From: Haliotis cracherodii
Lineage: Eukaryota
NCBI RefSeq assembly: GCF_022045235.1
Contig: NW_027266275.1
Span: 68,758,001-68,822,000, forward strand
DNA length: 64,000 nt
Reading direction: 5' to 3'
Numbering within the stretch: the first letter of the stretch is position 1; every line of letters starts with the position of its first letter. Both the position numbers and the translations under genes were made by a program. The notes under the pieces were generated by a model, which was not told the origin of the DNA, did no database searches, and saw only the letters and a program-made list of their open reading frames with translations. This document shows positions 118-61,173 of this stretch, in pieces.

Positions 118-2686
118 CTAGTTGGCACCACACATACCAAGTCGGTTGCATGACGTTTTAACATTCTGTAATAAAAAAGTGTTCCATTCTTTTACATATT
201 TTTGATTAAATAAACAGTAGTCTTTTAACTCTAACTATCCAGGTTTTATACTTCATTCTGATCATACATATTTATAAGTGTCCTTAATGGATATGTGTAA
301 AGAAATCGACATATATGGCTGTAAAGTGTAAGTTTATGTATATATCAAAACAATGAGTATCTCACTTATACATCCAACATTTACTTACAACCAAATCTAG
401 TAGCTCGATTTCCATTTCGATTGCTGCATCTAGAAAGTCAGCACACTGAAACAGAGTACACAAAATGCTCAAACATAATTAGATGAATGTGAAATTGTAT
501 ACATACACACATTATATAATGATATAAGAATATATATATACCATGACTGATTATGAAATTAACTGTAACACAATATGAGGGGCGACCCTCGGGATCAGAT
601 GGTCAGGCTAGCTGACTTGGGTGATGCACGTCATTGTATCCGATACTCATGGTGTCAAACACATGGATTGTCTAGGACTACACTAAGGAAAGAACTACTG
701 AATTTATATCATAATCAGAAAACTGAACAATGATTGGATAACTATATACACACCTGTTCCTGGCGGTCTTCGCTGAGCTTTTCACAGAACATGGTTTCGA
801 TCAGTTCATTTACAGAGGCCTGTAAAAGAAAAGTTTTTAACTACACGTAGTCATGATTTTATGATTGCATTACATCAACGTGTACGATTTTTTAATGTAA
901 CTTAAAACAAGATGGTACATATTTTATGTATTTGGGGAAATAATGCAAATGTGCCAGACCAACATAGGAGTGATAAACCTTCTCAATATTTGTCACTCAC
1001 AACAGTGTCCATTTGCCTTTCTTTGACGTCTTTGAGAAAGTTCTTGCAGTCCTTGCATCGCCCTCTCCCTTGAACCTACGAAACATGAAATGACAAATTG
1101 AATGCATCATTATCATTATGCCTACAGTTTTTAAACTTTCGATTGTAACCAATGTAACAATAATATTGCAGCACAAAAAGTGTGACGAAAGACGAACCTA
1201 CTTTCTAACCAAATAAATTGTACAAATCATGAACACGTTAAGACATTCATTTGATTGTGAGTAAGTTTGATGAGTTATACCCAGTAAACCTGTTGACAAG
1301 AGGACTGGTACTAGGTATTAATCTTGCCTTGTTTGTAGGTGTGTTCATGTTGGCGGTATCAAGCGACGGACAGTACTTAGTGTCTTTACAGATGGCTTCA
1401 GGGCTCTGTGAAGGTGAACACAATTACATGATATGTTGTAAAACCCAATCCTTTTGCTTACTCGCAGTGTACAGTAATAATTATAGAGTTAAAGGGTAAA
1501 ATCATAGTCCAATCCTCATCATTTTGTGTAACTCAGTGAAAACATAGTAAAGGTTATTATTCTGATAAAGGAAATGTAAGCTGAAATGCTGATATAGAGT
1601 TTTCCATCTCCTTCCCCGGGTATCTAAATTCCATCTGATTGGTACATTCCTGAACTTTTTGCATCAATCACCCTTTTCATGATGTCAGTATATGCAAATG
1701 TTAGCTGACGCAATCTTGTGCTTCATGATTAGTCCATTGATTGGAGCAGGATTTCGGATGATGTAAAAGTTAACAATTACCTGACTGTTGACTTTGTCCT
1801 TCTTCTTCTGGCATATTTTCTGCACTTTTGTCTTACACTGCAAATACGCGTTTTACAATATTAGCCTCAAGAATACTATTTTATCTAATTCACAGCGTTA
1901 AGGATCAACACAGTTTTCTATGAATATAGATTATTGTACATTTTTAATTATCTACCTTGTGATATATTCAGTACATAGCTCTTTTCAATGAAACATCTGA
2001 TCTTGTTGTTTATGAAATCTGTTTGTTTACTATTGAGAACTATTATTTATCTCACCTCTTCCACCTTGCTGGGTTCCATTGAAGAACAGACGTTGTTCAT
2101 TTTTGCTTCCTGTTCTTCCTGAAACACATGTTATATAAAAACTCAGTACAATAGATCTGGAGAAGAGACATGAGTGTATTTGTGACATGTTTACCTCCTT
2201 ACGTTCTGGGGTAGACTTACCTCTAAATATATATGTAGTAATAGATCTATTTGTAGTAGATAGAATACTGATAAATATATGAGAGTAGGCTTCAGTACAA
2301 TATTCTACCAACGACTGGACAGATGCCATTTATTTACGTACAATCGATTCGAGTTCCATCTCCTGGCGATCAGTAATGAAAGCGATGCAATCAGCGCACT
2401 CATCATTTCCATCCTGTATCGACATGGCCATAGCTGAAAACATGTCAATATAAAACGTCAACGCGTCAACTTTAGTCAAAAAATGATTAATGTAAATATG
2501 TTTAGATTCGAACACATCAGAAAAAGAATTAATGCATATAATTGGATTTCCGTAAATATCATATTGCTTCGCCTTAGCAACGACCATGGTATCTACTGAG
2601 AAGTGGATACTAAGAAGGCATGGCCATTTAAACCACTCACCTTGGCTTGCTACAACAGCGACTACAAATGCGAAAAAGGTCTTCAT
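118..2686 (-). CDS. Two-domain secreted saposin-like protein (SAPLIP), copy 1, 193 aa, 9 coding exons
   Basis: Exons 2686-2641, 2433-2342, 2118-2056, 1837-1781, 1405-1328, 1075-1001, 819-754, 445-389, 165-118. All have AG acceptors and GT donors except a GC donor after exon 5; spliced frame is open. Protein: MKTFFAFVVAVVASQAMAMSIQDGNDECADCIAFITDRQEMELESIEEQEAKMNNVCSSMEPSKVEECKTKVQKICQKKKDKVNSQSPEAICKDTKYCPSLDTANMNTPTNKVQGRGRCKDCKNFLKDVKERQMDTVASVNELIETMFCEKLSEDRQEQCADFLDAAIEMEIELLDLVNVKTSCNRLGMCGAN. Hydrophobic N-terminus and two SapB-type Cys patterns. Confidence 0.88.
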
Positions 2687-2707
2687 TGTCCTTGAAGCTG
2701 AGAAATT

Positions 2708-2745
2708 CAACTGTTGTGATGTGTTTAAATGTAAAGCTTTATATA
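2708..2745 (-). promoter_or_regulatory. Candidate TATA box and initiator of copy 1 (same motif upstream of copies 2-6)
   Basis: Reverse complement TATATAAAG at 2745-2737 and CAGTT about 30 nt downstream. Confidence 0.5.
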
Positions 2746-4578: not shown

Positions 4579-6221
4579 AAAAGTATATAGGAGAGTTACA
4601 AGGTATAATATTAAAGATAATTACATGAAAATTATTACATTGTCAGAGAATACCACCATATACCACTGTGGTAACGGATTTTGTTAGTAAATTCCGTCCA
4701 TATAATGAAAGGGGTATAGTCCTCGAATTTCACTTCGTGAGTAAGAGCGACTGGTATCTGGATCTGTATCCAAAGGTGGCTTACAGGACAGCAAACATAG
4801 CCTGATTTGTTGTGGAGTTCAACGCTGATGTCAACGGGACCTATACACACAATGTCACACCATAAGTTCTCTCTTATTGTTCTCTTACTCACACAGTGGC
4901 ACCGTACGTGAGTCAGTAAGTCATGGTAGTTGATACCACAGTGTGAACAGATACCATGTAATTTCCCCGGTCTCCACATCGCCCAAATGTGGACAGCAAA
5001 ACAGGCAGCTGCCTTTACGTCAGGACACTCTCGAGCTGTCCTCCTCGCCATGTGTGGGGTCACATCCGGATGAATACTCTCAAAGTTCACAGTGTCAGTT
5101 TCTGATGAAAGTCTTTCCCGCCATGCTGGTACTTCAAAAGTATTCACGGCTTCTTTGACTGTCCTTTTCCATATTTTCCGCTCCAGGGATGTACTGGAAC
5201 TAAGAAATGCCTCAGGGTGACAGGATAATGAATACTTGTGGAGGATGCGATATATGTCTGGGACAAAGATCTTACTTTTGGATGAACACTTATGTATATA
5301 CATGGAGATACGAGTCATAAAAACCTTCTTAGAAAGCAGATGATTAGAACAATGAGAGAGGTGGCCAAGAAAGAATAGTTTCCTGATGTTGATAAGTGAT
5401 TCTATGGGGAGCCAGCCGAGAAGAGCATTAACTATGTCAGACCTAGTATGACGTGGAAGTCCCTGTGCCATTTTGAGAATGGACCTCTGTGCTCTTTCTA
5501 TAGCCAGAATTTCTGCCTTGGAAATCATCGACCATAACACCCAAACATAGCCTTTGGGATACAAATTGGCGTAATAAGTTTTGAGCTTGTCCTTGGGTTT
5601 AGAGCGCGTTCATGCAGTTCCGATTTGACGAGTGCCATGGCTGATGCTTTCATCTTTGAGCAGCTCTCCAGAGTTCTCTACCATGAGTTAAATTCAGTGT
5701 TCAATATAACCAACGTGCTTAAGCTCATTTGTCACTGGGATATCACGTCCATAGAGTACAACACTAGAAGCAGCTGCTTTTCTGTCACTATATCTGACTA
5801 TCTGGCTCTTGGAAAGAGAGAAAGAAAACCGCCAGTCTGAACTATATCTTTCACTGATGGACATCATCTTCTGCAGATTTGCTGATACTGGACTAACAAC
5901 TGCAACTGCAACAGCCTTGTTGCGTATTAGGGTTTTGCAAATTGATGTTTTTTTCCCTTGACTTGTTAGAAGATCAACTGATGACTGGTCAGTGCTCTAT
6001 GTCCAAACGTATCCTTTCTACGTGTGCCTCAATGTGCTTCCTAAACTCTTGATCAAAGTGACGCTCATCTTGGTCGCTTGATACCTGTCTCATATGGTTT
6101 GGCATGATGGTACAGATTTTTTTGGCATTTCTTGTTTGCACACCTTCTTCTTCAAGGCATGGAACTGGTTCCCACGTCGAATTAAAGTCTCAAACATCTT
6201 CTGATCTAGGTTACAAATGGA
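4579..6221 (-). mobile_element. Degenerate non-LTR retrotransposon (LINE), RT core deleted
   Basis: ORF 4635-5564 has a C-terminal CSHC..H...HC zinc knuckle; collinear with the RT-bearing copy at 24249-26376. Confidence 0.8.
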
Positions 6222-7145: not shown

Positions 7146-9454
7146 TATGTTGGAGGAAACTACTAGGTCGGCAGAGACCGTGACTGTAAGTGAGATTCAG
7201 TAATGTCCAGCAACAAGACAACTGAGCAGTGCAAGCCAGATGACCATCAAGACACTACGAGTACATCATTATCAGTGCCTGACAAGATGAATACCAGACC
7301 AACTGTACTACAGCAGGAATGTGAAGAGACTGAAAGGAGATGTTCCAAGAGAGTCACCAGACCACTAGTTAGACTGAATCTCTTACCTTGTGAGACAAGA
7401 GCACTTTGTGCCCCGTGAAAGGTCGTGCTCATTGCAGAGACTTTAAAATTAAAGTTTATTCAAATATTTCAAGTTGATAAGTTCTGAGTTAAAAGTTTGT
7501 AACGTTGGTGAAGCTTTAACCATTCAAATGAAGGATAGGTCTGGTATCCATCTGATAATAGTTCTAAGGAATGTAATGTTTCCTTCACTTATTGTCCAAT
7601 GCTAGGCAACCACTACCACATCATATCCTGTGCGACACTAGGTCACGATTAACCGTCACTGTTACCATGCAATGAAATGGTTGAACCTTACATGTCTCCT
7701 TATTGTCTTTGTCACTGTACATTTACATGATTCCCGGTAAAGTGCCCGTGGGTGAAGCGGATATATGAGACTGAGCCGTTGAGCAGTGAATATAATTTCA
7801 ATTAATCAAAAGAGAGTATTAATATTCAAGAGCACCCATGTGTGGCATAGCATTATAGCACCCATCACGAGTGCTGATGAAACTGACGTACTGTTCAAAG
7901 AGGGGTTAACCTAAACTCACTCACTCTTTGCTGTACAAGCGATAGCTTCGTTCTGTTTATCTTCTTAGGATATTTGTTGAAAATAGTAATCGTAATGGGT
8001 TCATTTGCCATTAACTGTTTTATTTCAATTTGTTTCAGGAATTAACTGGTGACAACTTATTATGTTCATTTGTCTTGATCCTGTATACATGTGTCTCCTC
8101 CTTTAATGGTATAATGTCTGGTTCTGAGTATTTAGTTCACCGCATAATGGTCTATCCTCAAGGATGAGGATGCGATTGGTTCAGTCGTCTGAGGCGCCGC
8201 TATTCGCCGTGCAGAGTTGCGTTCCTTGGACAAACCAAACCCAACTCACTTCCTCTATCCTCAAAATAGAACGATAATAGAAAAACGTGTTAAAGTAGTT
8301 TCATTTGATCATCAGTTAACCAGCCTGGACCAATTTCTTTGCGTTCTTGACTGTCGAGAGTCTATGTTATGTATGGTATGATAAATGGCGTTCCACTAGG
8401 ATTCGATTGCTAAATAATTTTCACGTGCCTATTATATGACACAGGTTCAACAAATGATCTCCATATCTCACATAAACGTCCAAGCAACAACAGTTCTCTG
8501 GACAAATGCAAAGTTTTATTGACAATGTTTTACAGGTGACGTTGTTCGTGGGCGATGAAGGATCGAGAGGCAGCATTGTCAGCATCTGCAATACCAAAAA
8601 TACTCACTAAAGTTAACCGTGTCATGTGTAATATTGTAAGAATATTCCATATCATGACTAGTTATCAGGAAAGTGGACAGAGCATCCGTCCGGTGAGCAG
8701 AAGACAGTTGGTCCAGAGTAAGTATTTCTCCCAATCAACCTATGCTGGTTGTTAGAGGCGATTTAATGGGTCGATTGGCCAGGCTCGGTAATTTGGCTGA
8801 TTGCGTGTCTGGTTCAGACAGGCCTTCATATAGCTGGAATAGTGCTGATTGTGGCGTTGAAGTAAACGAAACAAACAGTCAATAGTTCCAACCGAAACTT
8901 GTTCCTCAGACAGCGCTGTAACTATTGCGTAGACAGAAGGAAAACCTCCGTGGTGTATTGGACAGGGCGTCTGCCCGAGGCGCCATTAAAATTACTGTGG
9001 AGTAATTTGTCCTGATTTGTAAACCTAGTTAATTTTTGTAATTCATTTGTTGATTGTATACAACATGCTGGTTCTTTGTTGGTTCAACAAGAAGTTCTTT
9101 TACGTTTTGATTTCTGGATTAACATACTATTTCAATTTGGGAACCAACACGAAACAGTACATAATTTCAATTTGTAAAAGGAAAATAGCAATGTTCAAAA
9201 GCACCCGTGTGTGCTTTAGCGCAACATCAACCATCAACAAGCACTGGCCGGCTTGGTGTCTGAGTATAATTGTGTCATAGTGGGGTTTCTATGTGAAACT
9301 GCGACATGGCATCTCAGTGAGCAAGCACTATAAAGTCCGGACAAGAACAAGCCGCCACATGGAGTGCAATAATCTTGAACGCGATGTTAAAACTCATCCC
9401 GCCTCACTTCACCTTACCTCGCCTATATCACGTTCAATACAACTCACCTTACAA

Positions 9455-12199
9455 CTAGTTGGCACCACACATACCAAGTCGGTTGCATGACGTTTTAACA
9501 TTCTGTAATAAAAAAATGTTCCATTCTTTTACATTTTTAAAATTAAATAAACAGTAGTCTTTTAACTCTAACTATCCAGGTTTTATACTTCATTCCGATC
9601 ATACATATTTATAAGTGTCCTTAATGGATATGTCTACAGAAATCGACATATATGTCTGTCAAGTGTAAGTTTTTGTATATATCAAAACAATGAGTATCTC
9701 ACTTATACATCCAACATTTACTTACCACCAAATCTAGTAGCTCGATTTCCATTTCGATTGCTGCATCTAGAAAGTCAGCACACTGAAACAGAGTACACAG
9801 AATGCTCTAACATAATTAGATGAATGTGAAATTGTATACATACACACATTATATAATGATATAAGAACATATATCATGACTGATTATGAAATTAACTGTA
9901 ACACAATATGAGGGGCGACCTACGGGATCAGATGGTCAGGCTAGCTGACTTGGATGGTGCACCTAATTGTATCCGATACTCATGGTGTCAATCACATGGA
10001 TTGTCTAGGACTACAATAAGGAAAGAATTACTGAATTTATATCATAATCAGAAAACTGAACAATGATTGGATAACTATATACACACCTGTTCCTGGCGGT
10101 CTTCGCTGAGCTTTTCACAGAACATGGTTTCGATCAGTTCATTTACAGAGGCCTGTAAAAGAAAAGTTTTTACCTACACGTAGTTATGATTTTATGATTG
10201 CATTACATCAACGTGTACGATTTGTTAATTTAACTTAAAACAAGATGGTACATATTTTATGTATTTGGGGAAATAATGCAAATGTGCCAGACCAACATAG
10301 GTGTGATTAAACCTTCTCAATATTTGTCACTCACAACAGTGTCCATTTGCCTTTCTTTGACGTCTTTGAGAAAGTTCTTGCAGTCCTTGCATCGCCCTCT
10401 CCCTTGAACCTACGAAACATGAAATGACAAATTGAATGCATCATTATAACTACAGTTTTTAAACTTTCGTCTGTAACCAATGTAACAATAATATTGCAGC
10501 GCAATAAGTGTGACGAAAGACGAACCTACTTTTTAACCAAATAAATTGTACAAATCATGAACACGTTAAGACATTCATTTGATTGTGTGTAAGTTTGATG
10601 AGTTATACTCACTAAACCTGTTGACTAGAGGACTGGTACTAAGTATTAATCTTGCCTTGTTTGTAGGTATGTTCATGTTGGCCGTATCAAGCGACGGGCA
10701 GTACTTGGTGGCTTTACAGATGGCTTCAGGGGTCTGTGAAGGTGGACACAATTACATGATATGTTGTAAAACCCAATCCTTTTGCTTCCTCGCAGTGTAC
10801 AATAATAATTAAAGAGTTAAAGGGTAAAATCATAGTCCAATCCTCATCATTTTGTGTAACTCAGTGAAAACATAGTAAAGGTTATTATTCTGATAAAAGA
10901 AATGTAAGCTGAAATGCTGATATAGAGTTTTCCTCTCCTTCCCCGGGTATCTAAATTCCATCTGATTGGTACATTCCTGAACTTTTTGCATTAATCACCT
11001 TTTTCATGATGTCAGTATATGCAAATGTAAGCTGACGCAATCTTGTGCTTCATGATAAGTCCATTGATTGGAGCAGGATGATGTAAAAGTTAACAGTTAC
11101 CTGACTGTTGACTTTGTCCTTCTTCTTCTGGCATATTTTCTGCACTTTTGTCTTACACTGCAAATACGCGTTTTTATAATATTAGCCTCAAGAATATTAG
11201 TTTATCTAATTCACAGCGTTAAGGATCAACACAGTTTGCTATGAATATAGATTATTGTTCCTTTTTAATTATCTACCTTGTGATATATTCAGTACATTGC
11301 TCTTTTCAATGAAACATCTGATCTTGTTGTTTATGAAATCCGTTTGTTTACTATTGAGAACTATTATTTATCTCACCTCTTCCACCTTGCTGGGTTCCAT
11401 TGAAGAACAGACGTTGTTCATTTTTGCTTCCTGTTCTTCCTGAAACACATGTTATATAAAAACTCAGTACATTAGATCTGGAGAAGAGACATGAGTGTAT
11501 TTGTGACATGTTTACCTCCTTACGTTCTGGGGTAGACTTATCTTTAATTGTATGTAGTAATAGATCTATGTGTAGGAGAATACTGATAAATATATGAGAG
11601 TAGGGTACAGTACAATATTCTACCAACGACTGGAGAGATGCCAGTTATTTGGGGAAATTGAAAAATTCAGATGTAGATTCCGAAACGAACACTTGGTTGA
11701 CTGGTCCCATTACTTTAAGTATTATATTGAGGGTAGGGGTATAAACCATTAGTGTATAATCAAAAAGATAATGTTCTAAACATGTACGTATATGTTAGTG
11801 GGCACGTTTGGAAATAGTACGATTTTTACGAACCATCATGGGTTATAGTCGGTATTATTTACGTACAATCGATTCGAGTTCCATCTCCTGGCGATCAGTA
11901 ATGAAAGCGATGCAATCAGCGCACTCATCATTTCCATCCTGTGTCGACAGGGTCATAGCTGAAAACATGTCAATATAAAACGTCAACGCGTCAACTTCAG
12001 TAATAAAAATATGTTTAGATTCGAACACATCAGAAAAAGAATTAATGCATATAATTGGATTTCCGTAAATATCATATTGCGGCGCCTTAGCCACGACCAT
12101 CGTATCTACTGAGAAGTGGATAGTAAGAAGGCATGGCCATTTAAAACACTCACCTTGGCTTGCTACAACAGCGACTACAAATGCGAAAAAGGTCTTCAT
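9455..12199 (-). CDS. Saposin-like protein, copy 2 (intact)
   Basis: Exons 12199-12154, 11958-11867, 11439-11377, 11157-11101, 10733-10656, 10409-10335, 10152-10087, 9782-9726, 9502-9455. Same exon lengths and splice sites as copy 1; variants AMTLSTQ, TPEAICKAT, NMNIP. Confidence 0.88.
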
Positions 12200-19292: not shown

Positions 19293-22032
19293 CTAGTTGG
19301 CACCACACATACCAAGTCGGTTGCATGACGTTTTAACATTCTGTAATAAAAAAATGTTCCATTCTTTTACATTTTTAAAATTAAATAAACAGTAGTCTTT
19401 TAACTCTAACTATCCAGGTTTTATACTTCATTCCGATCATACATATTGATTAGTGTCCTTAATGGATATGTCTACAGAAATCGACATATATGTCTGTCAA
19501 GTGTAAGTTTATGTGTATATCAAAGCAATGAGTATCTCACTTATACATCCAACATTTACTTACCACCAAATCTAGTAGCTCGATTTCCATTTCGATTGCT
19601 GCATCTAGAAAGTCAGCACACTGAAACAGAGTACACAGAATGCTCAAACATAATTAGATGAATGTGAAATTGTATACATACACACATTATATAATGATAT
19701 AAGAATATATATCATGACTGATTATGAAATTAACTGTAACACAATATGAGGGGGGATCAGATGGTCAGGCTAGCTGACTTGGATGGTGCACGTCATTGTA
19801 TCCGATACTCATGGTGTCAATCACATGGATTGTCTAGGACTACAATAAGGAAAGAACTACTGAATTTATATCATAATCAGAAAACTGAACAATGATTGGA
19901 TAACTATATACACACCTGTTCCTGGCGGTCTTCGCTCAGCTTTTCACAGAACATGGTTTCGATCAGTTCATTTACAGAGGCCTGTAAAAGAAAAGTTTTT
20001 AACTACACGTAGTCATGATTTTATGATTGCATTACATCAACGTGTACGATTTGTTAATTTAACTTAAAACAAGATGGTACATATTTTATGTATTTGGGGA
20101 AATAATGCAAATGTTCCAGACCAACATAGGAGTGATAAACCTTCTCAATATTTGTCACTCACAACAGTGTCCATTTGCCTTTCTTTGACATCTTTGAGAA
20201 AGTTCTTGCAGTCCTTGCATCGCCCTCTCCCTTGAACCTACGAAACATGAAATGACAAATTGAATGCATCATTATGCCTACAGATTTTAAACTTTCTATT
20301 GTAACCAATGTAACAATAATATTGCAGCACAAAAAGTGTGACGAAAGACGAACCTACTTTCTAACCAAATAAATTGTACAAATCATGAACACGTTAAGAC
20401 ATTCATTTGATTGTGAGTAAGTTTGATGAGTTATACTGACTGGTACTAGGTATTAATCTTGCCTTGTTTGTAGGTGTGTTCATGTTGGCGGTATCAAGCG
20501 ACGGACAGTACTTGGTGGCTTTACAGATGGCTTCAGGGCTCTGAGAAGGTGAACAGAATTACATGATATGTTGTAAAACCCAATCCTTTTGCTTACTCGC
20601 AGTGTATAATAATAATTATAGAGTTAAAGGGTAAAATCATAGTCCAATCCTCATCATTTTGTGTAACTCAGTGAAAACATAGTAAAGGTTATTATTCTGA
20701 TAAAGGAAATGTAAGCTGAAATGCTGATATAGAGTTTTCCATCTCCTTCCCCGGGTATCTAAAGTCCATCTGATTGGTACTTTCCTGAACTTTTTGCATC
20801 AATCACCTTGTTCATGATGTCAGTATATGCAAATGTAAGCTGACGCAATCTTGCGCTTCATGATTAGTCCATTGATTGGAGCAGGATTTCGGATGATGTA
20901 AAAGTTAACAATTACCTGACTGTTGACTCTGTCCTTCTTCTTCTGGCATATTTTCTGCACTTTTGTCTTACACTGCAAATACGCGTTTAACAATATTAGC
21001 CTCAAGAATACTATTTTATCTAATTCACAGCGTTAAGGATCAACACAGTTTGCTATGAATATAGATTATTGTACCTTTTTAATTATCTACCTTGTGATAT
21101 ATTCAGTACATAGCTCTTTGCAATGAAACTTCTGATCTTGTTGTTTATGAAATCCGTTTGTTTACTATTGAGAACTATTATTTATCTCACCTCTTCCACC
21201 TTGCTGGGTTCCATTGAAGAACAGACGTTGTTCATTTTTGCTTCCTGTTCTTCCTGAAACACATGTTATATAAAAACTCAGTACAATAGATCTGGAGAAT
21301 AGACATGAGTGTATTTGTGACATGTTTACCTCCTGACGTTCTGGGGTAGACTTACCTCTAAATATATATGTAGTAATAGATCTATGTGTAGTAGATAGAA
21401 TACTGATAAATATATGAGAGTAGGGTTCAGTACAATATTCTACCAACGACTGGACAGATGCCATTTATTTTGGGAAATTGGAAAAATCAGATGTAGATTC
21501 CGAAACGAACATATTGGTTGACTGGTCCCATTACTTTAAGTATTATATTGAGGGTAGGGGTATAAACCATTAGTGTATAATCAAAAAGATAATGTTTTAA
21601 ACATGTACGTATATGTTAGTGGGCACGTTTGGAAATAGCACGATTTTTACGAACCATCATGTGTTATAGTCGGTATTATTTACGTACAATCGATTCGAGT
21701 CCCATCTCCTGGCGATCAGTAATGAAAGCGATGCAATCAGCGCACTCATCATTTCCATCCTGTATCGACAGGGCCATAGCTGAAAACATGTCAATATAAA
21801 ACGTCAACGCGTCAACTTTAGTCAAAAAATAATTAGTGTAAATATTTTTAGATTCGAACACATCAGAAAAAGAATGAATGCATATAATTGGATTTCCGTA
21901 AATATCATATAGCTGCACCTTAGCAACGACCATGGTATCTACTGAGAAGTGGATAGTAAGAAGGCATGGCCATTTAAAACACTCACCTTGGCTTGCTACA
22001 ACAGCGACTACAAATGCGAAAAAGGTCTTCAT
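19293..22032 (-). CDS. Saposin-like protein, copy 3 (intact)
   Basis: Exons 22032-21987, 21779-21688, 21253-21191, 20972-20916, 20540-20463, 20237-20163, 19981-19916, 19620-19564, 19340-19293; variants AMALSIQ, EMGLESI, KKKDRV. Confidence 0.88.
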
Positions 22033-39895: not shown

Positions 39896-42714
39896 CTAGT
39901 TGGCACCACACATACCAAGTCGGTTGCATGACGTTTTAACATTCTGTAATAAAAAAGTGTTCCATTCATTTACATATTTTTAATTAAATAAACAGTAGTC
40001 TTTAAACTCTAACTATCCAGGTGTTCATACTTCATTCCGATCATACATATTGATAAGTGTCCTTAATGGATATGTGTAAAGAAATCGACATATATGTCTG
40101 TAAAGTGTAAGTTTATGTATATATCAAAACAATGAGTATCTCACTTATACATCCAACATTTACTTACCACCAAATCTAGTAGCTCGATTTCCATTTCGAT
40201 TGCTGCATCTAGAAAGTCAGCACACTGAAACAGAGTACACAGAATGCTCAAACATAATTAGATGAATGTGAAATTGTATACATACATACATTATATAATG
40301 ATATAAGAATATATATCATGACTGATTATGAAATTAACTGTAACACAATATGAGGGGCGACCTACGGGATCAGATGGTCAGGCTAGCTGACTTGGATTGT
40401 GCACGTCATTGTATCCGATACTCATGGTGTCAAACACATGGATTGTCTAGGACTACAATAAGGAAAGAACTACTGAATTTATATCATAATCAGAAAACTG
40501 AACAATGATTGGATAACTATATACACACCTGTTCCTGGCGGTCTTCGCTGAGCTTTTCACAGAACATGGTTTCGATCAGTTCATTTACAGAGGCCTGTAA
40601 AAGAAAAGTTTTTAACTACACGTAGTCATGATTTTATGATTGCATTACATCAACGTGTACGATTTGTTAATTTAACTTAAAACAAGATTGTACATATTTT
40701 ATGTATTTGGGGAAATAACGCAAATGTGCCAGGCCAACATAGGAGTGATAAACCTTTTCAATATTTGTCACTCACAACAGTGTCCATTTGCCTTTCTTTG
40801 ACATCTTTGAGAAAGTTCTTGCAGTCTTTGCATCGCCCTCTCCCTTGAACCTACGAAACATGAAATGACAAATTGAATGCATCATTATGCCTACAGTTTT
40901 TAAACTTTCGTTTGTAACCAATGTAACAATAATATTGCAGCACAATAAGTGTGACGAAAGACGAACCTACTTTCGAACCAAATAAATTGTACAAATCATG
41001 AACACGTTAAGACATTCATTTGATTGTGAGTAAGTTTGATGAGTTATACTCACTAAACCTGTTGACTAGAGGACTAGTACTAGGTTTTAATCTTGCCTTG
41101 TTTGTAGGTGTGTTCATGTTGGCGGTATCAAGCGACGGACAGTACTTGGTGGCTTTACAGATGGCTTCAGGGCTCTGTGAAGGTGAACACAATTACATGA
41201 TATGTTGTAAAACCCAATCTTTTTACTTACTCGCAGTGTACAATAATAAATATAGAGTTAAAGGGTAAAATCATAGTCCAATCCTCATCATTTCGTGTAA
41301 CTCAGTGAAAACATAGTAAAGGTTATTATTCTGATAAAGGAAATGTAAGCTCAAATGCTGATATAGAGTTTTCCATCTCCTTCCATCTGATTGGTACATT
41401 CCTGAACTTTTTGCATCAATCACCTTTTTCATGATGTCAGTATATGCAAATGTAAGCTGACGCAATCTTGTGCTTCATGATTAGTCCATTGATTGGAGCA
41501 GGATTTCGGATGATGTAAAAGTTAACAGTTACCTGACTGTTGACTTTGTCCTTCTTCTTCTGGCATATGTTCTGCACTTTTGTCTTACACTGCAAATACG
41601 CGTTTTTACAATGTTTTTAAGGATCAACACAGTTTGCAATGAATATAGATTATTGTTCCTTTTTAATTATCTATCTTGTTAATACCACATAAATATTAGT
41701 TTATCTAATTAACAGAGTTAAGGATCCACACAGTTTGCAATGAATATATATTATTGTTCCTTTTTAATTATCTACCTTGTGATATATTCAGTACATTGCT
41801 CTTTGCAATGAAACGTTTGATCTTGTTGTTTATGAAATCCGTTTGTTTACTATTGAGAACTATTATTTATCTCACCTCTTCCACCTTGCTGGGTTCCATT
41901 GTAAACAGACGTTGTTCATTTTGGCTTCCTGTTCCTCCTGAAACACATGTTATATAAAAACTCAGTACAATAGATCTGGAGAAGAGACATGAGTGTATTT
42001 GTGACATGTTTACATCCTTATGTTGAGGGGTAGACTTATTTTTAATTATATGTAGTAATAGATCTATGTGTAGTAGATAGAATAGTGATAAAAATATGAG
42101 AGTAGGGTTCAGTACAATATTCTACCAACGACTGGACAGATGCCATTTATTTTGGGAAATTGGAAAATTCAGATGTAGATTCCGAAACTGAACACTTGGT
42201 TGACAGGTCCCATTACTTTATGTATTATATTGAGGGTAGGGGTATAAACCATTAGTGTATCATTAAAAAGATAATGTTCTAAACATGTATGTATATGTAA
42301 GTGTGGACATTTAGAAATAACACAATCTTTACGAACTATAATGGGATATAGTCGGTATTATTTACGTACAATCGATTCGAGTTCCATCTCCTGGCGATCA
42401 GTAATGAAAGCGATGCAATCAGCGCACACATCATTTCCATCCTGTATCGACAGTGCCATAGCTGAAAACATGTCAATATAAAACGTCAACGCGTCAACTT
42501 TAGTCAAAAAATGATTAATGTAAATATGTTTAGATTCGAACACATCAGAAAAAGAGTGAATGCAGATAATTGGATTTCCGTAAATATTATATTGCTGCGC
42601 CTTAGCCACGACCATCGTATCTGCTGAGAAGTGGATAGTAAGAAGGCCTGGCCATTTAAAACACTCACCTTGGCTTGCTACAACAACGACTGCAAATGCG
42701 AAAAAGGTCTTCAT
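39896..42714 (-). pseudogene. Saposin-like protein, copy 5, with a 1-nt frameshift in exon 3
   Basis: Exons 42714-42669, 42461-42370, 41937-41876 (62 nt instead of 63), 41589-41533, 41174-41097, 40850-40776, 40594-40529, 40224-40168, 39943-39896. The + strand reads gtaaacagac at 41901 versus gaagaacagac in copies 1-4, giving a premature TGA in exon 5. An assembly error cannot be excluded. Confidence 0.72.
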
Positions 42715-48528: not shown

Positions 48529-51500
48529 CTAGTTGGCACCACACATACCAAGTCGGTTGCATGACTTTTTAACATTCTGTAATAAACAAAAGTTCCTTTC
48601 TTTTACTTATGTTTAATTAAATAAACAGTATTCTCTTAACTCAAACCAGCCAGGTATTTACACATATTGATATATGTCCTTATTTGGTGTATGTAAAGAA
48701 ATCGACACATATGGCTGTAAAGTGTACGTTTATGCATGTACTAAAACAATGAGTATCTCACTTGTACATCCAACATTTACTTACCACCAAATCTAGTAGA
48801 TCGATTTCAATTTCGGTTGCTGCATCTAGAAGATCAGCACACTGGAACAGAGTACACAGAATGCTCAAAAATAATTAGATGAATTTGAAATTGTGTATAT
48901 ACACACATTATATAATGATATAAGAATATATATATATGACGACTGATTATGAAATTAACTGTAACATTATATGAGAGGCGACTAACGGGATCAGATCGTC
49001 AGGCAAGCTGATTTGGATGGTGCATGTCATTGTATCCGATATTCATGGTGTCAAACACATGGATTGTGAAGTCCTGACTCGATTATGAACAGACTGCCGT
49101 AAAATAGCTAGAATATTGCGGGGTGCGGCTTTAAATAACAAACAAAAACTACAATAAGGAAAGAATTACTGAATTTATATCATAAACAGAAAACTTAACA
49201 ATGACTGGAAAACTATATACACACCTGTTCCTGGCGGTCTTCGCTGAGCTTTTCACAGAACATGGTTTCGATCAGTTCATTTACAGAGGCCTGTAAAAGA
49301 AAAGTTTTTAACTACACGTAGTCATGATTTTATGATTGCATTACATCAACGTGTACGATTTGTTAATTTAACTTAAAACAAGATTGTACATATTTTATGT
49401 ATTTGGGGAAATAACGCAAATATGCCAGACCAACATAGGAGTGATAAACCTTCTCAATATTTGTCACTCACAACAGTGTCCATTTGCCTTTCTTTGACGT
49501 CTTTGAGAAAGTTCTTGCAGTCCTTGCATCGCCCTTTCCCTTGAACCTACGGAGACATGAAATGACAAATTGAATGCATCATTATGCCTACAGTTTTTAG
49601 GCTTTCGTTTGTAACCAATGAAACAAGAATATTGTAACAAGATAGACACAATTTTTATGGATAACAACTTTTTTAATAAAGTTGTATCCGATACTCAGTC
49701 TTGCTTGACAACGGTATAAGGATCTATACCGAAACGTCGCCTTTTACAGTATTAAAGAAGTTGTTATCCATAAAAATTGTGTCTATCTTGTCAACTTCTA
49801 AGTAATCCCTATCAAACAATTTAAGAATATTGTAGCACAATAAGTGTGACGAATCGAGACCTCCCCTTTCTAACCAAGTACATTGTACAAATAATGTACA
49901 CGTTAGGACATTCATTTGATTGTGTGTAAGTTTGATGAGTTGTACTCACTAAACCTGTTGACTAGTGGACTAGTACTAGGTATTAATCTTGCCTTGTTTG
50001 TGGGCGTGTTCATGTTGACGGTATCAAGCGACGGGCAGTACTTGGAGGCTTTACAGATGGCTTCAGGGGTCTGTGAAGGTGAACTCAATTGCATGATATG
50101 TTGTAAAACCCAATGCTTTTACTTACTGGCAGTGTACAATAATTATAGAGTTAAAGGGAAAAATATAGTTCAGTTCTCAACCTTTTATGTAAATCAGTTA
50201 AAACATGATAAAGGTTAATATTCTGTTCAACGAATTGTAAGCTGAAATGCTGATATAGAGTTTTCCATCTCTTTCCCCGGGTATCTAAATTCCATCTGAA
50301 TGTTTTGCATCAATCACCTTTTTCATGATGTCAGTATATGCAGATGTAAGCTGACGCAATCTTGTGCTTCATGATCAGTCCATTGATAGGAGCAGGATTT
50401 CGGATGATGTAAAAGTTAACAGTTACCTGACTGTTGACTTTGTCCTTCTTCTTCTGGCATATTTTCTGCACTTTTGTCTTACACTGCAAATACGCGTTTT
50501 TATAATGTTTTTAAGGATCAACACAGTTTGCAATGAATATAGATTATTGTTCCTTTTTAATTATCTATCTTGTTAATACCACATAAATATAAGTTTATCT
50601 AATTAACAGAGTTAAGGATCCACACAGTTTGCAATGAATATATATTATTGTTCCTTTTTAATTATCTACCTTGTGATATATTCAGTACATTGCTCTTTGC
50701 AATGAATCATCTGATCTTGTTGTTTATGAAATCCGTTTGTTTACTATTGAGAACTATTATTTATCTCACCTCTTCCACCTTGCTGGGTTCCATTGAAGAA
50801 CATACGTTGTTCATTTTTGCTTCCTGTTCCACCTGAAACACATGTTATATAAAAACTCTGTACATTAGATCAGGAGAAGAGACATGAGTGTATTTGTGAC
50901 ATGTTTACATCCTTACGTTGAGGGGTAGACTTATTTTTAATTATATGTAGCAATAGATCTATGCGTAGTAGATAGAATACTGATAAATATATGAGAGTAG
51001 GGTTCAGTACATTATTTTACCAACGACTGGACAGATCCCATTTAATTTGGGAAATTGGAAAATTCAGATGTAGATTCCGAAACTGAACACTTGGTTGACA
51101 GGTCCCATTACTTTATGTATTATATTGAGGGTAGGGGTATAAACCATTAGTGTATCATTAAAAAGATAATGTTCTAAACATGTATGTATATGTAAGTGTG
51201 GACATTTAGAAATAAAACCATCCTTACGAACTATAATGGGATATAGTCGGTATTATTTACGTACAATCGATTCGAGTTCCATCTCCTGGCGATCAGTAAT
51301 GAAAGAGATGCAATCAGCGCACACATCATTTCCATCCTGTTTCGACAGTGCCATAGCTGAAAACATGTCAATATAAAACGTCAACTTTAGTACAAAAATG
51401 ATTAATGTAAATATGTTTAGATTGGAACACATCAGAAAACGAATCCTGATTAATGGATATAATTGGATATCTTGAAATATTATATTGCTGCGCCTTAGCC

Positions 51501-51607
51501 ACGACCATCGTATCTGCTGAGAAGCGGATAGTAAAAAGGCATTGCCATTTAAAACACTCACCCTGGGTTGCTACAACAGCGACTACAAATGCGAAAAAGG
51601 TCTTCAT
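48529..51607 (-). CDS. Saposin-like protein, copy 6 (intact, more diverged)
   Basis: Exons 51607-51562, 51356-51265, 50832-50770, 50483-50427, 50070-49993, 49546-49472, 49290-49225, 48841-48785, 48576-48529. Variants AMALSKQ, DVCADCISF, VQGKGR, CADLLDAATEIEIDLLDLV, NVKKSC; all 13 Cys kept. Confidence 0.87.
49637..49822 (+). mobile_element. 186-bp Penelope-like insertion in intron 5 of copy 6
   Basis: 12-bp TSD AAGAATATTGTA (49625-49636, 49823-49834); 42-bp inverted repeat with one mismatch (49637-49678 / 49750-49791); absent from the other six copies; contains a hammerhead-like motif. Confidence 0.7.
49703..49740 (+). ncRNA. Minimal type I hammerhead ribozyme-like motif (U3-A8 variant)
   Basis: GC-TTGACAA-C-GGTATA[AGGATC]TATACC-GAAAC-GTC-GC. 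Confidence 0.55.

Positions 51608-54857: not shown

Positions 54858-54861
<4 letters not shown>

Positions 54862-54921
<60 letters not shown>
54862..54921. repeat. (AT)n microsatellite, about 30 units
   Basis: Directly visible. Confidence 0.95.
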
Positions 54922-54923
<2 letters not shown>

Positions 54924-58264: not shown

Positions 58265-58302
58265 TATATAAAGCTTTACATTTCAACACATTTCAACAGT
58301 TG
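58265..58302 (+). promoter_or_regulatory. Candidate TATA box and initiator of copy 7
   Basis: TATATAAAG about 30 nt upstream of CAGTT and about 55 nt upstream of the ATG; conserved in all seven copies. Confidence 0.55.
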
Positions 58303-58323
58303 AATTTCACAGCTTCAAGTACA

Positions 58324-61173
58324 ATGAAGACCTTTTTCGCATTTGTTGTTGCTGTTGTAGCAGGCCAGGGTGAGTGTTTTAAATGACCATGACATTTTAC
58401 TATCCGCTTATCAGTAGATACGATGATACGTGACTAAGGCGCTGCGATATGATGTGTGAAGATAGTTAGACTTGTAAGGATGCGTTTTTCATGTGAGAGA
58501 ATCTAAACATATTTACATTAATCATTTTCAGTTGACGCATTGACGTTTTATATTTACATGTTTTCAGCTATGGCCATGTCGATACAGGATGGAAATGATG
58601 AGTGTGCTGATTGCATCGCTTTCATTACTGATCGCCAGGAGATGGAACTCGAATCGATTGTACGTAAATAATACCGACTATATCCCATGATAGTTCGTAA
58701 AGTTCAAAATGTGCCCACTAACATATACGTACATGTTTATAACATTATCTCATTGATTATACACTAATGGTTTATACCCTTATCCTTAATATAATACATC
58801 AAAATGGGATTTGTTGTCAACCAAGTGTCATTTGGGAAATAATATGGCAACTGTCAAGTCCTTAGAGGAATAATGTACTGAGTAATGTACTATCTACCAT
58901 AAATGAATCTATTACTGAAGATATGTCCATATATTTATCAGTATTCTATCTACCACAAATTAATCTATTACAACATATGTGTACATATTTTAAAAGAAGC
59001 CTATCCATGAAACTACGAATGTAAAATATCACAAATACACTGCTTCTTTCTCTTCTCCAGATTTAATGTACTGAGTTTTTAAACATTTCTTTCAGGATGA
59101 ACAGGAAGCAAAAATGAACAATATCTGTTCCACAATGGAACCCAGCCAGGTGGAAGAGGTGAGAAAAATAATAGTTCTCAATAGTAAACAAACGGATTTC
59201 ATAAACAAGAAGATCAGACATGTCATTGCAAAGAGGAATGTATTAAATATATCACACATCTGATAATTGAGGTAATAATTTTGATTATCTTTTGCAAACA
59301 ATTATCACTGTTCAGCGTTCTAGAACTGCCTGTATATTTTTAACAAGGTAGATAATTAAAAAGGAACAATAATCTCTATTCATTGTAAATTGTCACTTTT
59401 AAAATCTTAACGCCGTGATCATAGATAATCTAGTATTATCGAGGCTAACATTGTGAAAACGCGTATTTGCAGTGTAAGACAAAAGTGCAGAAAATATGCC
59501 AGAAGAAGAAGGACAAAGTCAACAGTCAGGTAACTGTTAACTTTTACATCATCCGAAATACTGCTCCAATCAATGGACTTATCATGAAGCACAAGATTGC
59601 GTCATCTTACATTTGCATATACTGACATCATGAAAAAGGTGATTGATGCAAAAAGTTCAGGAAAGTACCAATCAGATGGAATTTCGATACCCGGGGAAGG
59701 AGATGGATACCTCCATATCAGCATTTCAGCTTACATTCCCTTTATCAGAATAATAACCTTTATCATGTATACACTGATTTACACAAAACGCTGAGAACTG
59801 AAATTTGTTTTTCCCTTCAACTCTGTTATCATTATTGTAAACTGCGAGTAAGTAAAAGGATTGGGGTTTACAACATTTCATGCAATTTTGTTCACCTTCA
59901 CAGACCCCTGAAGCCATCTGTAAAGCCACCAAGTACTGTCCGTCGCTTGGTACCGCCAACATGAACACACCTACAAACAAGGCAAGATTAATTCCTAGTA
60001 CTAGTCCACTAGTCAACAGGTTTAGTGATGTTAACTCATCAAACTTACACACAATCAAATGAATGTCTTAACGGAGGTCTTCATTCGTCACACTTATTGT
60101 GCTACAATATTATTGTTACATTGGTTACAAACGAAAGCCTAAAACACGTAGGCATAATGATACGTTCAATTTGTCATTTCATGTTTCCGTAGGTTCAAGG
60201 GAGAGGGCGATGCAAGGACTGCAAGAACTTTCTAAAAGACGTCAAAGAAAGGCAAATGGACACTGTTGTGAGTGACAAATATTGAGAAGGTTTATCACTC
60301 CTATGTTGGTCTGGCATATTTGCATTTTTTCCCAAACTACATAAACATGTACCATCTTGTTTTAAGTTAAGTTAACAAATCGTACACGTTGATGTTATGC
60401 AATTATAAAATCATGACTACTTTTAGTTAAAAGCTTTCCTGTTACAGGCCTCTGTAAATGAACTGATTGAAACCATGTTCTGTGAAAAGCTGAGCGAAGA
60501 CCGCCAGGAACAGGTGTATTTATAGTTATCCAATACTTTTTCAGTTTTCTGTTTTTGATATAAATTCAGTAGTTCTATTCTGATTGTTTTTTAACGCCGC
60601 ACTCTGCAATATGTTAGCTACTTTACTGCAGTCTGAAAATAATCAACTCTGGACCAGACAATCCAGTGATTGACATCATGAGTGTTGGAGACAATGACGT
60701 GCACCATCCAAGTCAGCGAGCCTGACTATCTGATACCGTTAGTCGTCTCTCATATCTTACAGTACATTTCATAATGAGTCATCATATATATTCTTATATC
60801 ATTATATAATGTGTGTATGTTTATACTTTCAAACTCATCTAATTGTTTTTGAGCATTCTATGTACTCTGCTTCAGTGTGCTGACTTTCTAGATGCAGCAA
60901 TCGAAATGGAAATCCAGCTGATAGATTTGGTAGTAAGTAAATGTTGGATGAATAAATGAGATGCTCATTATTTCAATACATGCATAAACTTACACTTTAC
61001 AGACATAGATACACCAAATAAGGACAATTATCACTATGTTTAAATAACTGGATAGTTAGAGTTAAAAGACTACTGTTTTTTTTAATTAAACATATGTAAA
61101 AGAGTGGAACATTTTCTTATTACAGGATGTTAAGAAGTCATGCAATCGGCTTGGTATGTGTGGTGCCAACTAG
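58324..61173 (+). CDS. Saposin-like protein, copy 7 (inverted, intact)
   Basis: Exons 58324-58369, 58568-58659, 59096-59158, 59473-59529, 59904-59981, 60193-60267, 60448-60513, 60876-60932, 61126-61173 (582 nt). Exons are clearly better conserved than introns relative to copies 1-6, and all indels fall in introns. Confidence 0.9.
60590..60750 (-). mobile_element. Fragment of another SINE-like family in intron 7 (also 578-676, 8720-8880, 48975-49145, 61610-61740, 63845-64000)
   Basis: Recurring motifs GGTCAGGCTCGCTGACTTGG, CACTGGATTGTCTGGTCCAGACTCGATTATT and AATATTGCTGAGTGCGGCG. Confidence 0.6.

What the first reader, a model, noticed from the sequence alone, without database searches (positions are those of the whole stretch)
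118..61173. Hidden seven-copy cluster encoding a secreted double-saposin-domain protein
Seen: nine exons of 46-92 nt splice into one 193-aa frame in six of seven copies. Cys28-31-57-68-92-98 and Cys119-122-149-160-184-190 both match saposin-B spacing and follow a signal-peptide-like N-terminus. Exons are conserved while introns accumulate indels and TEs. There is no SapA module, only two domains (prosaposin has four), and no N-X-S/T sequon. Established: SAPLIPs include lipid-binding and membrane-lytic effectors (NK-lysin, granulysin, amoebapores, caenopores). Inference: a lineage-specific, recently dosage-amplified secreted membrane-active family (immune, mucus, digestive or gamete role) that I do not recognise as a described gene.
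Basis: partly seen in the sequence, partly recalled or inferred. Interest (0 to 1): 0.88.

Follow-up and report, generated by a model that had tools for sequence, protein, structure and literature searches.

The report
Abalone two-domain saposin-like gene array
Black abalone carries a tandem array of at least 12 spliced, expressed genes (seven in this window) for a small secreted protein made of two divergent saposin-like domains; the family is found only in abalones, is already in RefSeq under automatic names, and has not been studied.

Summary
Seven gene copies lie at 118-61173, six on the minus strand and one inverted. Each has nine coding exons of 46-92 nt that splice to 582 nt (193 aa). 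Six copies are intact; copy 5 has a 1-nt deletion in exon 3. RNA-like public runs cover only the exons and show all eight predicted junctions, including a GC-AG intron.

Corrections:
- There is a 13th cysteine, Cys76.
- There is a tenth, non-coding exon about 870 nt past the stop codon.
- The array runs beyond the window. It has 12 copies plus a fragment over about 113 kb, and 10 copies are intact.
- The genes are not hidden. RefSeq proteins of Haliotis cracherodii (for example XP_071107792.1) are identical to the spliced models and are named "prosaposin-like" or "uncharacterized".

Identity as a divergent SAPLIP is well supported:
- the cysteine pattern, twice;
- only saposins hit among solved structures (profile E 0.0016);
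- BLASTP links to Pfam-positive abalone saposin proteins;
- intron positions shared with an adjacent array of more canonical two-domain genes.

Pfam itself gives no hit, and the AlphaFold models are of low confidence.

Function is untested. The mature protein is acidic (pI 4.7) and unusually hydrophilic, so a cationic lytic peptide is unlikely. I found no paper on this family.

Verdict: a new, lineage-specific member of a known kind. The scan had already noted a double-saposin tandem family in the window 60 kb upstream.

The parts
118..2686 (-). Gene copy 1, ATG to stop, intact. Coding exons: 2686-2641, 2433-2342, 2118-2056, 1837-1781, 1405-1328 (GC donor), 1075-1001, 819-754, 445-389, 165-118. 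Its 3'-UTR exon lies about 750 nt before the window start.
   Evidence: All eight junctions are seen in RNA-like contigs. The translation is identical to P0017 = XP_071107791.1.
2737..2745 (-). TATA box (TATATAAAG) 59 nt upstream of the ATG of copy 1. The same box and the flanking blocks are conserved in all seven copies.
9455..12199 (-). Gene copy 2, intact, 193 aa.
   Evidence: Identical to P0001 = XP_071107792.1.
8479..8585 (-). Tenth, non-coding 3'-UTR exon of copy 2. The acceptor is at 8585, and AATAAA is at 8520-8515; the 3' end is approximate. Equivalent exons start at 18422, 28857, 39028 and 47795 on the minus strand and at 61816 on the plus strand (copy 7). The donor lies 7 nt after the stop codon.
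   Evidence: Loose ends of RNA contigs at place 111, located. Acceptor and poly(A) signal.
19293..22032 (-). Gene copy 3, intact.
29728..32491 (-). Gene copy 4, intact.
   Evidence: Identical to P0018 = XP_071107794.1.
39896..42714 (-). Gene copy 5, a pseudogene or sequencing variant. Exon 3 (41937-41876) is 62 nt instead of 63, so the frame is lost just after the Cys57 codon.
48529..51607 (-). Gene copy 6, intact and more diverged (intron divergence about 11% from copies 1-4).
49635..49823 (.). Dispersed palindromic element, MITE-like, inserted in intron 5 of copy 6 (coordinates approximate).
   Evidence: query positions 89-277 match hundreds of loci on both strands.
58324..61173 (+). Gene copy 7, intact and inverted, head-to-head with copy 6. 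It is the most diverged copy (intron divergence about 15%).
   Evidence: Identical to P0014 = XP_071107796.1. Groups with H. rufescens P0006 in the tree.
4635..5564 (-). A 309-aa open frame in the spacer. It is the C-terminal part of a dispersed LINE-like ORF and was amplified together with the unit. It recurs at 14479-15408 and is decayed in units 3 and 4.
   Evidence: The same piece was pulled into the H. rufescens model P0008.
545..640 (.). Very high-copy repeat inside intron 7 of copy 1.
   Evidence: word depth of about 75,000 in the DNA-like run X5, with many loose ends at 590-641.

Best explanation
These are real, transcribed genes of black abalone (Haliotis cracherodii). They form a tandem array of about 10-kb units, and each unit carries one ten-exon gene behind a conserved TATA promoter.

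Shown:
- The mRNA encodes a 193-aa precursor: a cleavable-looking signal peptide (exon 1), then two saposin-B-type domains.
- Each domain is written by four phase-0 exons with introns at equivalent positions, so the gene arose by internal duplication of a four-exon module.
- The family is a fast-diverged sister of an adjacent array of more canonical two-domain saposin-like genes.
- The family exists only in abalones as far as the searches reach.
- It has been amplified by unequal crossing-over of units that include a LINE fragment, and it is kept under purifying selection.

Inferred:
- The product is secreted or sent to an endolysosomal or digestive compartment as a disulfide-locked helical protein.
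- It acts there as saposins do, by binding or extracting lipids or perturbing membranes at acidic pH.
- A digestive-gland or mucosal defence role is the most likely setting.
- High dosage serves to produce large amounts of product.
For: - Gene model and copies.
- Splicing: all eight junctions, and depth on exons only, in three RNA-like runs, against even coverage in a DNA-like run.
- Untranslated exon, TATA box and AATAAA.
- Public annotation: identical RefSeq proteins.
- SAPLIP identity, sequence: two C-x2-C...C-x10-C...C-x5-C patterns. The only solved-structure hits are saposins B and D across whole domains (E 0.066-0.14 for a single sequence; profile E 0.0016). BLASTP to the SapB_2-positive P0022 gives E 4e-5 to 2e-4, and both domains align in register to P0025 at E 5e-4 to 0.003.
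- SAPLIP identity, gene structure: intron positions (immediately before Cys4; five codons before Cys5) are shared with the P0025 family.
- SAPLIP identity, structure: the top 11 Foldseek hits are all saposins, with probability up to 0.99. VIA gives Z 8.5 to open saposin A for domain 1, and Z 5.6 to Na-SLP-1 and Z 4.6 to saposin D for domain 2.
- SAPLIP identity, language-model features: the nearest clusters are all SapB families.
- Selection: pN/pS 0.08-0.52, and exons 2-3 times less diverged than introns.
- Array extent.
- Acidic pI, as in saposins.
Against: - Pfam SapB_1 and SapB_2 give no hit on the whole protein or on any exon.
- hhalign against the two-sequence neighbour profile gave only 2.3% probability.
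- The AlphaFold models are of low confidence (mean pLDDT 55.8 and 61.8). The VIA-wide search cannot tell domain 1 from generic helical hairpins.
- Domain 1 is much more hydrophilic than canonical saposin domains and carries a polybasic helix 3, so lipid binding is not assured.
- The tissue and conditions of expression are unknown, because the runs are coded.
- The signal peptide was judged by eye only.
Confidence: 0.75

Rival explanations
1. Antimicrobial pore-former of the amoebapore, caenopore or NK-lysin type. The precursor would be secreted into mucus, gut or haemolymph, perhaps cut at the basic site before domain 2 into two single-domain peptides that permeabilise microbial membranes. Amplification would reflect an arms race with pathogens.
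For: - It is a SAPLIP with a signal peptide and a lineage-specific tandem expansion, as in nematodes, amoebae and the rumen fluke (PMC11727788).
- A basic cluster (GRGR, GKRR or GRRR) sits directly before Cys1 of domain 2 in all species.
- Apparent transcript abundance is high.
Against: - The net charge is -10 and the pI 4.7, whereas NK-lysin and granulysin are strongly cationic.
- pN/pS is below 1 in every pair, with no sign of diversifying selection.
- The dibasic site is degraded to G-R-G-R in most H. cracherodii copies.
- There are no activity or induction data.
Confidence: 0.2
2. Neofunctionalised saposin fold that no longer handles lipids. The charge-swapped helices would make the two domains clasp each other, or bind charged polymers such as algal sulfated polysaccharides, mucins or mineral surfaces. 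The protein would then be a structural or binding component of a secretion.
For: - Domain 1 has GRAVY -0.76 and only 27% hydrophobic residues, against +0.44 and about 40% in the neighbouring canonical family.
- Exon 4 is +6 where the equivalent exon 8 is -6, and exon 2 is -7 where exon 6 is +3. This pattern is conserved across species.
- AlphaFold models domain 1 in an open V-shaped form, as in saposin dimers and lipid complexes.
Against: - The domain-domain prediction gave no verdict.
- The open model has low confidence.
- Domain 2 keeps a normal hydrophobic content.
- There is no direct evidence for any polymer partner.
Confidence: 0.15
3. Decaying or non-functional duplicates: an annotation artefact of a repeated segment with no protein product of consequence.
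For: Two of the 12 copies are broken: copy 5, and copy 10 outside the window. The units carry TE debris.
Against: - Ten copies keep the full frame, all splice sites and all 12 pattern cysteines.
- pN/pS is well below 1 while synonymous divergence equals intron divergence.
- The promoter is conserved even in the oldest copies.
- Spliced transcripts are abundant.
- Orthologues are retained in four species.
Confidence: 0.03

Closest known systems
Adjacent abalone 'prosaposin-like' two-domain family (P0025, 238 aa; array at G000:C12:68671362-68723601, plus strand)
   Same: Both have a signal peptide followed by two SapB-type domains. Both show the 4+4 exon design, with introns immediately before Cys4 and five codons before Cys5. 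Both are acidic, tandemly arrayed, on the same chromosome segment and found only in abalones.
   Different: They share only about 23% identity. P0025 domains are hydrophobic (GRAVY +0.44) and reach or approach the Pfam SapB_2 threshold. The family studied here is hydrophilic, has charge-swapped helices and gets no Pfam hit.
Human saposins A-D, prosaposin and PSAPL1 (the source of the automatic RefSeq names)
   Same: They share the six-cysteine spacing, the helical content and the acidic pI. They give the best sequence and structure matches: 1n69, 4v2o, 5u85 and 4ddj.
   Different: This family has two domains instead of four and no SapA modules. It has no N-glycosylation sequon and an extra Cys76. 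Identity is about 20%. It is not an orthologue of prosaposin; canonical multi-domain saposin genes lie elsewhere on the same contig, at 68.48-68.50 Mb and 15.73-15.75 Mb.
Amoebapores, caenopores (SPP) and NK-lysin/granulysin
   Same: All are SAPLIP-fold proteins that are secreted or stored in granules. They often occur as lineage-specific multigene families (established knowledge; for expansions).
   Different: Those are single-domain effectors, and NK-lysin and granulysin are cationic. This protein has two domains and a net charge of -10. No lytic activity has been tested.
Rumen-fluke (Calicophoron daubneyi) SAPLIP expansion, PMC11727788
   Same: It is a species-specific expansion of secreted SAPLIP genes and includes a two-domain member of 193 aa. 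It is interpreted as feeding or microbe-related.
   Different: It is an unrelated lineage with no detectable sequence relationship. Most fluke members have a single domain. The equal length is a coincidence.

Membership tests
SAPLIP / saposin B-type domain | Six cysteines spaced C-x2-C ... C-x10-C ... C-x5-C in about 75 residues | tested here: met
   Cys28-31-57-68-92-98 and Cys119-122-149-160-184-190 are present in every intact copy and conserved across the Haliotis homologues.
SAPLIP / saposin B-type domain | Match to Pfam SapB_1 (PF05184) or SapB_2 (PF03489) above the gathering score | tested here: not met
   There is no hit even at E <= 10 on P0001, P0006 or P0007, on single exons, or in six-frame scans of the window region. 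The family is too diverged for the curated models.
SAPLIP / saposin B-type domain | Detectable sequence homology to accepted saposin domains | tested here: met
   The profile of five family members hits only saposin B chains in the PDB (E 0.0016-0.0019, whole domain). BLASTP to the SapB_2-positive domains of P0022 gives E 4e-5 to 2e-4. Both domains align in register to P0025. Intron positions are shared. hhalign against the two-sequence profile was weak.
SAPLIP / saposin B-type domain | Four- to five-helix saposin fold | tested here: inconclusive
   AlphaFold2 mean pLDDT is 55.8 and 61.8, with helices where expected. The top Foldseek hits are all saposins, but with E of about 0.2-0.4. VIA gives Z 8.5 (4ddj) for domain 1 and Z 5.6 (3s63_B) and 4.6 (3bqq_D) for domain 2. 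In the wide search, generic helical hairpins tie with these.
SAPLIP / saposin B-type domain | Disulfide connectivity C1-C6, C2-C5, C3-C4 | not testable with these tools
   This needs mass-spectrometric disulfide mapping or a solved structure.
SAPLIP / saposin B-type domain | Lipid or membrane interaction | not testable with these tools
   This needs recombinant protein and liposome assays. The composition of domain 1 (GRAVY -0.76) makes the result uncertain.
Prosaposin / PSAPL1 orthologue | Four SapB domains flanked by SapA modules | tested here: not met
   There are only two domains, and no SapA hit in Pfam. Canonical multi-domain genes lie elsewhere in the genome.
NK-lysin / granulysin-type cationic lytic SAPLIP | Single domain with a strongly positive net charge | tested here: not met
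   There are two domains. The mature protein has net charge -10 and pI 4.7.
Secreted protein | Cleavable N-terminal signal peptide, and no retention signal or membrane anchor | tested here: inconclusive
   The N-terminus MKTFFAFVVAVVASQA-MA has an n-region, a hydrophobic core and small residues at -3 and -1. The C-terminus MCGAN has no KDEL-type signal. No signal-peptide predictor is available here.

The most novel reading that the evidence does not exclude
The family may be a saposin fold turned to a new use. Domain 1 has lost much of its hydrophobic surface, and the equivalent helices of the two domains carry opposite charges: helix 1 is acidic in domain 1 and basic in domain 2, and helix 3 is basic in domain 1 and acidic in domain 2. 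One chain could therefore fold as a built-in saposin-B-like heterodimer held by electrostatics, or act as a binder of charged polymers such as algal sulfated polysaccharides, mucus or microbial surfaces. That would be a mode of action not described for SAPLIPs, produced in bulk from a 12-gene, abalone-only array.
Probability: 0.15. Interest if true: 0.6.

Novelty: new member of a known kind. Interest (0 to 1): 0.35.

Why it matters
Saposin-like proteins are a recurrent raw material for lineage-specific secreted effectors in digestion, immunity and parasitism. This region holds two adjacent arrays, one nearly canonical and one strongly diverged, with at least 17 genes in about 175 kb. That makes it a compact natural example of how a lipid-binding fold is duplicated internally, amplified, and pushed in sequence beyond the reach of the curated domain models. 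Black abalone is critically endangered and suffers from a digestive-tract disease, withering syndrome. An abundant, abalone-only secreted protein that may act in the gut or in mucosal defence is therefore a reasonable candidate for expression and association studies. Even so, the finding adds a member to a known kind and does not reveal a new one.

Tried and rejected
- Pfam on the whole protein, on homologues and on single exons gave no saposin hit. Six-frame SapB_1 and SapB_2 scans of the genome hit other loci but not this array.
- hhalign of the family profile against A2 was dominated by the family's own domain, which is fused into H. asinina models, so the result is trivial. Against the clean two-sequence neighbour profile it gave only 2.3% probability.
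- The VIA-wide fold search placed saposin A among many generic helical hairpins at Z 7-8, which does not discriminate.
- Complex prediction of domain 1 against domain 2 gave no verdict (score 0.01). This counts neither for nor against interdomain pairing.
- Literature searches (abalone or Haliotis with saposin, prosaposin or proactivator polypeptide; saposin with digestive gland and gastropod) found no study of this family. One H. discus hannai table lists a 'SapB1' gene co-varying with digestive enzymes in gonad samples. I could not link that gene to this family, so it is a lead only.
- The tissue of expression could not be determined: the runs are coded and both read tools are capped at one call.
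- The spacer ORF was considered as a second gene of the unit. I rejected this because it is the C-terminal part of a dispersed LINE-like ORF.
- The pseudogene or artefact reading was rejected (see rivals).
Exon 2 was searched by reference, and whole-protein searches used the database protein P0001, which is identical to spliced copy 2.


Full report
**What is in the window**

The window is G000:C12:68758001-68822000 of an abalone genome, identified as Haliotis cracherodii by identical RefSeq proteins. It consists of tandem units of 8.6-10.4 kb that are 95-98% identical among the first five. On the minus strand of unit 1 I read an ATG at 2686 behind a TATA box. Nine exons with AG/GT borders follow, down to a TAG at 120-118.

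A script that reads window.fa joined these exons. It gave 582 nt (193 aa), with cysteines at 28, 31, 57, 68, 76, 92, 98, 119, 122, 149, 160, 184 and 190. BLASTN of the nine exons found seven complete sets. Six are on the minus strand and one is inverted at 58324-61173. All have the same splice sites, including a GC donor after exon 5. Six copies keep the frame. In copy 5, exon 3 is one base short and the frame breaks just after Cys57. It omitted Cys76, which is Ser in two other species and so is not part of the core pattern.

**How the spliced model was searched**

Joining was done only inside scripts, from /data/window.fa, to check frame, cysteines and divergence. Exon 2 was searched by reference (window:2342-2431:-) against 1.84 billion representative proteins. 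The search returned P0001, a 193-aa protein identical to the spliced model of copy 2. All whole-protein searches, folds and alignments then used P0001 and its database relatives by id. Single exons were also run against Pfam by reference. The window contains no N.

**Is it expressed and spliced as predicted?**

Yes. I laid three small RNA-like runs and one DNA-like run on window 100-2750.
- The RNA-like runs have depth only over the nine exons and none in the introns. The DNA-like run covers every bin.
- Contigs in the RNA-like runs join 165|389, 445|754, 819|1001, 1075|1328, 1405|1781, 1837|2056, 2118|2342 and 2433|2641, within the stated 1-3 nt ambiguity. These are all eight predicted junctions.
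- The 1075|1328 joint fits only a GC-AG intron.
- Contigs run on past position 111 into sequence that is absent there. That sequence lies about 870 nt downstream of each gene, behind an AG acceptor and ahead of an AATAAA. There is therefore a tenth, non-coding exon, whose intron starts 7 nt after the stop codon.
- Word depths of hundreds to thousands in runs of about 80 Mb suggest abundant transcripts, but the tool warns that contig depth is a poor measure.
- The runs' 'RNA' label is a guess by the tool. Exon-only coverage and the junctions are what make them RNA.
- The tissue is unknown.

**Extent of the array**

A six-frame search of the whole genome with P0001 hit only C12:68730830-68843773. 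I fetched the flanks and mapped the exons.
- Two more intact minus-strand copies lie upstream.
- An exon 2-3 fragment lies further upstream.
- Downstream lie one minus-strand and one plus-strand intact copy.
- The last plus-strand copy is degenerate: Cys to Trp, a stop in exon 5, a frameshift, and exons 8 and 9 not found.

In total there are 12 copies, 10 of them intact, over about 113 kb. 'Seven-copy' is a window effect.

**Public annotation**

P0001 is XP_071107792.1. Copies 1, 4 and 7 equal XP_071107791.1, XP_071107794.1 and XP_071107796.1. RefSeq names the H. cracherodii proteins 'prosaposin-like' or 'uncharacterized protein', and the H. rufescens paralogues (at least eight) 'proactivator polypeptide-like 1'. 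Homologues at E <= 0.01 exist only in H. cracherodii, H. rufescens, H. asinina and H. rubra. The exon-2 HMMER scan of the full library found nothing credible outside them. The genes are therefore annotated but not characterised, and I found no paper on them.

**Is it a saposin-like protein?**

Evidence for:
- Both halves carry the exact C-x2-C / C-x10-C / C-x5-C pattern.
- phmmer against all PDB sequences returns only saposin B (residues 26-98, E 0.066) and saposin D (117-191, E 0.14). A five-sequence profile raises saposin B to E 0.0016, and nothing else is listed.
- P0001 aligns with the Pfam-SapB_2-positive domains of H. asinina P0022 at E 4e-5 to 2e-4. It aligns with both domains of H. cracherodii P0025 in register at E 5e-4 to 0.003.
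- Language-model features place it among SapB clusters (score 0.90, 202 shared features).
- Intron positions are equivalent in the two domains: about 15 codons after Cys2, immediately before Cys4, and five codons before Cys5, all phase 0. The latter two are identical in the P0025 gene, and the first lies within two codons (C2+17 there).
- The two domains align to each other at z = 4.9 over shuffles.

Evidence against, or weak:
- Pfam finds nothing.
- hhalign to the tiny neighbour profile is weak.
- AlphaFold2 gives mean pLDDT of only 55.8 and 61.8.

On those models the top Foldseek hits are all saposins, with probability up to 0.99 but E of about 0.2-0.4. VIA-align gives Z 8.5, rmsd 4.3 and 75 of 80 residues aligned to open saposin A (4ddj) for domain 1. 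For domain 2 it gives Z 5.6 to Na-SLP-1 (3s63_B) and Z 4.6 to closed saposin D. In the unbiased wide search, generic hairpins tie with saposin A.

I conclude that this is a divergent SAPLIP. Sequence and gene structure show it, and the structure predictions are compatible without proving it. It is not a prosaposin orthologue: it has two domains and no SapA, and canonical multi-domain genes sit at C12:68.48-68.50 Mb and 15.73-15.75 Mb.

**Genomic context and origin**

Directly upstream, at C12:68671362-68723601 on the plus strand, lies a second tandem array of five or six P0025-type genes. These are also two-domain and acidic, but hydrophobic and close to the Pfam threshold. By its position and length this probably refers to that array. 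Shared architecture and intron positions indicate that the two families descend from one two-domain, 4+4-exon ancestor.

Each unit of the present array also carries a 5'-truncated LINE-like ORF (4635-5564; dispersed copies have open frames up to 1173 aa). The same fragment is present in H. rufescens, where one RefSeq model (P0008) runs into it. The LINE therefore predates the amplification and was copied along with the gene.

**Evolution**

- Intron divergence is 2.8-4.9% among copies 1-5, about 11% to copy 6 and 15-17% to copy 7. Exon divergence is 2-3 times lower.
- pS is close to intron divergence, and pN/pS is 0.08-0.52. Selection is purifying, with no sign of positive selection.
- In a protein tree, copies 7 and 8 group with H. 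rufescens P0006 (support 92/95). The other copies form an unresolved group with a rufescens-only subclade.
- The array therefore predates the split of these species, and later expanded or was homogenised within each.
- Length differences between introns include TE insertions: a MITE-like element in intron 5 of copy 6 and a very high-copy repeat in intron 7.
- The promoter, with TATA at -59 and several upstream blocks, is conserved in all seven copies.

**What it probably does**

Shown: the protein is secretory-pathway-type by sequence, rich in disulfide-forming cysteines and helical. It is acidic (mature protein net -10, pI 4.7), abundant as mRNA, and under constraint.

Inferred: it acts like a saposin or amoebapore-type protein, interacting with lipids or membranes at acidic pH, in a digestive or endolysosomal compartment or on a mucosal surface. 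The acidic charge argues against an NK-lysin-type cationic mechanism.

Two features depart from ordinary SAPLIPs.
- Domain 1 is very hydrophilic: GRAVY -0.76 and 27% hydrophobic residues, against +0.44 and about 40% in the neighbouring family.
- Equivalent exons carry opposite charge: exon 2 is -7 against exon 6 at +3, and exon 4 is +6 against exon 8 at -6. This confirms note s1-846033, and the pattern is conserved across species.

These features allow a more novel reading, either a single-chain electrostatic 'heterodimer' or polymer binding. My one test of it, complex prediction, gave no verdict. A basic cluster directly before domain 2 (KRR or RRR in three species, GRGR in most H. cracherodii copies) could be a processing site, but it is not strictly conserved.

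**Verdict**

This is a new, abalone-specific and unstudied member of the SAPLIP kind. It is already present in automatic annotation and its function is unknown. Lineage-specific SAPLIP expansions are well known elsewhere (for example PMC11727788), so interest is moderate.

Noticed in passing
G000:C12:68671362-68723601 (upstream of the window; L001, L009, L010): A second tandem array of five or six genes with a period of about 10 kb, on the plus strand. It encodes a different two-domain 'prosaposin-like' protein (P0025, 238 aa), which is acidic, hydrophobic and near the Pfam SapB_2 threshold. It shares intron positions with the family in the window.
   Followed up: partly
window 4635-5564 and 14479-15408 (minus strand): An intact 309-aa open frame in the spacer of units 1 and 2. 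It is the C-terminal part of a dispersed LINE-like ORF whose genomic copies have open frames up to 1173 aa. One H. rufescens RefSeq model (P0008, 263 aa) splices the saposin-like gene into this fragment.
   Followed up: partly
window 1328/1327 and the equivalent site in all 12 copies: Intron 5 uses a GC donor (AAG|gcaaga). It is conserved in every copy, including the pseudogenes, and is confirmed by transcript joints.
   Followed up: yes
P0003 (H. asinina, 151 aa): This annotated protein lacks exactly the 26 residues of exon 5, which hold Cys5 and Cys6 of domain 1 and the linker. Because all exons after exon 2 are phase 0, it could be a real exon-skipping isoform or an annotation gap.
   Followed up: no
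P0022 / P0023 (H. asinina, 423 and 561 aa): These 'prosaposin-like' models fuse P0025-type domains to domain 1 of the present family. This suggests that the two families are adjacent in H. asinina too, and that the models are read-through fusions.
   Followed up: no
window 545-640 (intron 7 of copy 1): A short stretch with word depth of about 75,000 in a DNA-like run, and many divergent loose ends. It is a very abundant short interspersed repeat.
   Followed up: no
window 51607-58324, and G000:C12:68829809-68832528: The array changes orientation three times. Copies 6 and 7 are head-to-head, 6.7 kb apart. Copies 7 and 8 are tail-to-tail. Copies 8 and 9 are head-to-head, 2.7 kb apart. I did not look for inversion breakpoints.
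   Followed up: no
G000:C12:15727532-15751741 and 68482563-68498441: Two loci on the same contig have many canonical SapB_1 and SapB_2 exon hits, at least 11 and at least 4 domains respectively. These are the likely true prosaposin-type genes of this genome.
   Followed up: no
P0004 (567 aa, unknown source): A highly repetitive protein with about 12 repeats containing 'TCAECLWYITGWRIT' weakly matched exon 2 (E 9e-6) through the C-x2-C motif. It is probably spurious or a translated repeat.
   Followed up: no
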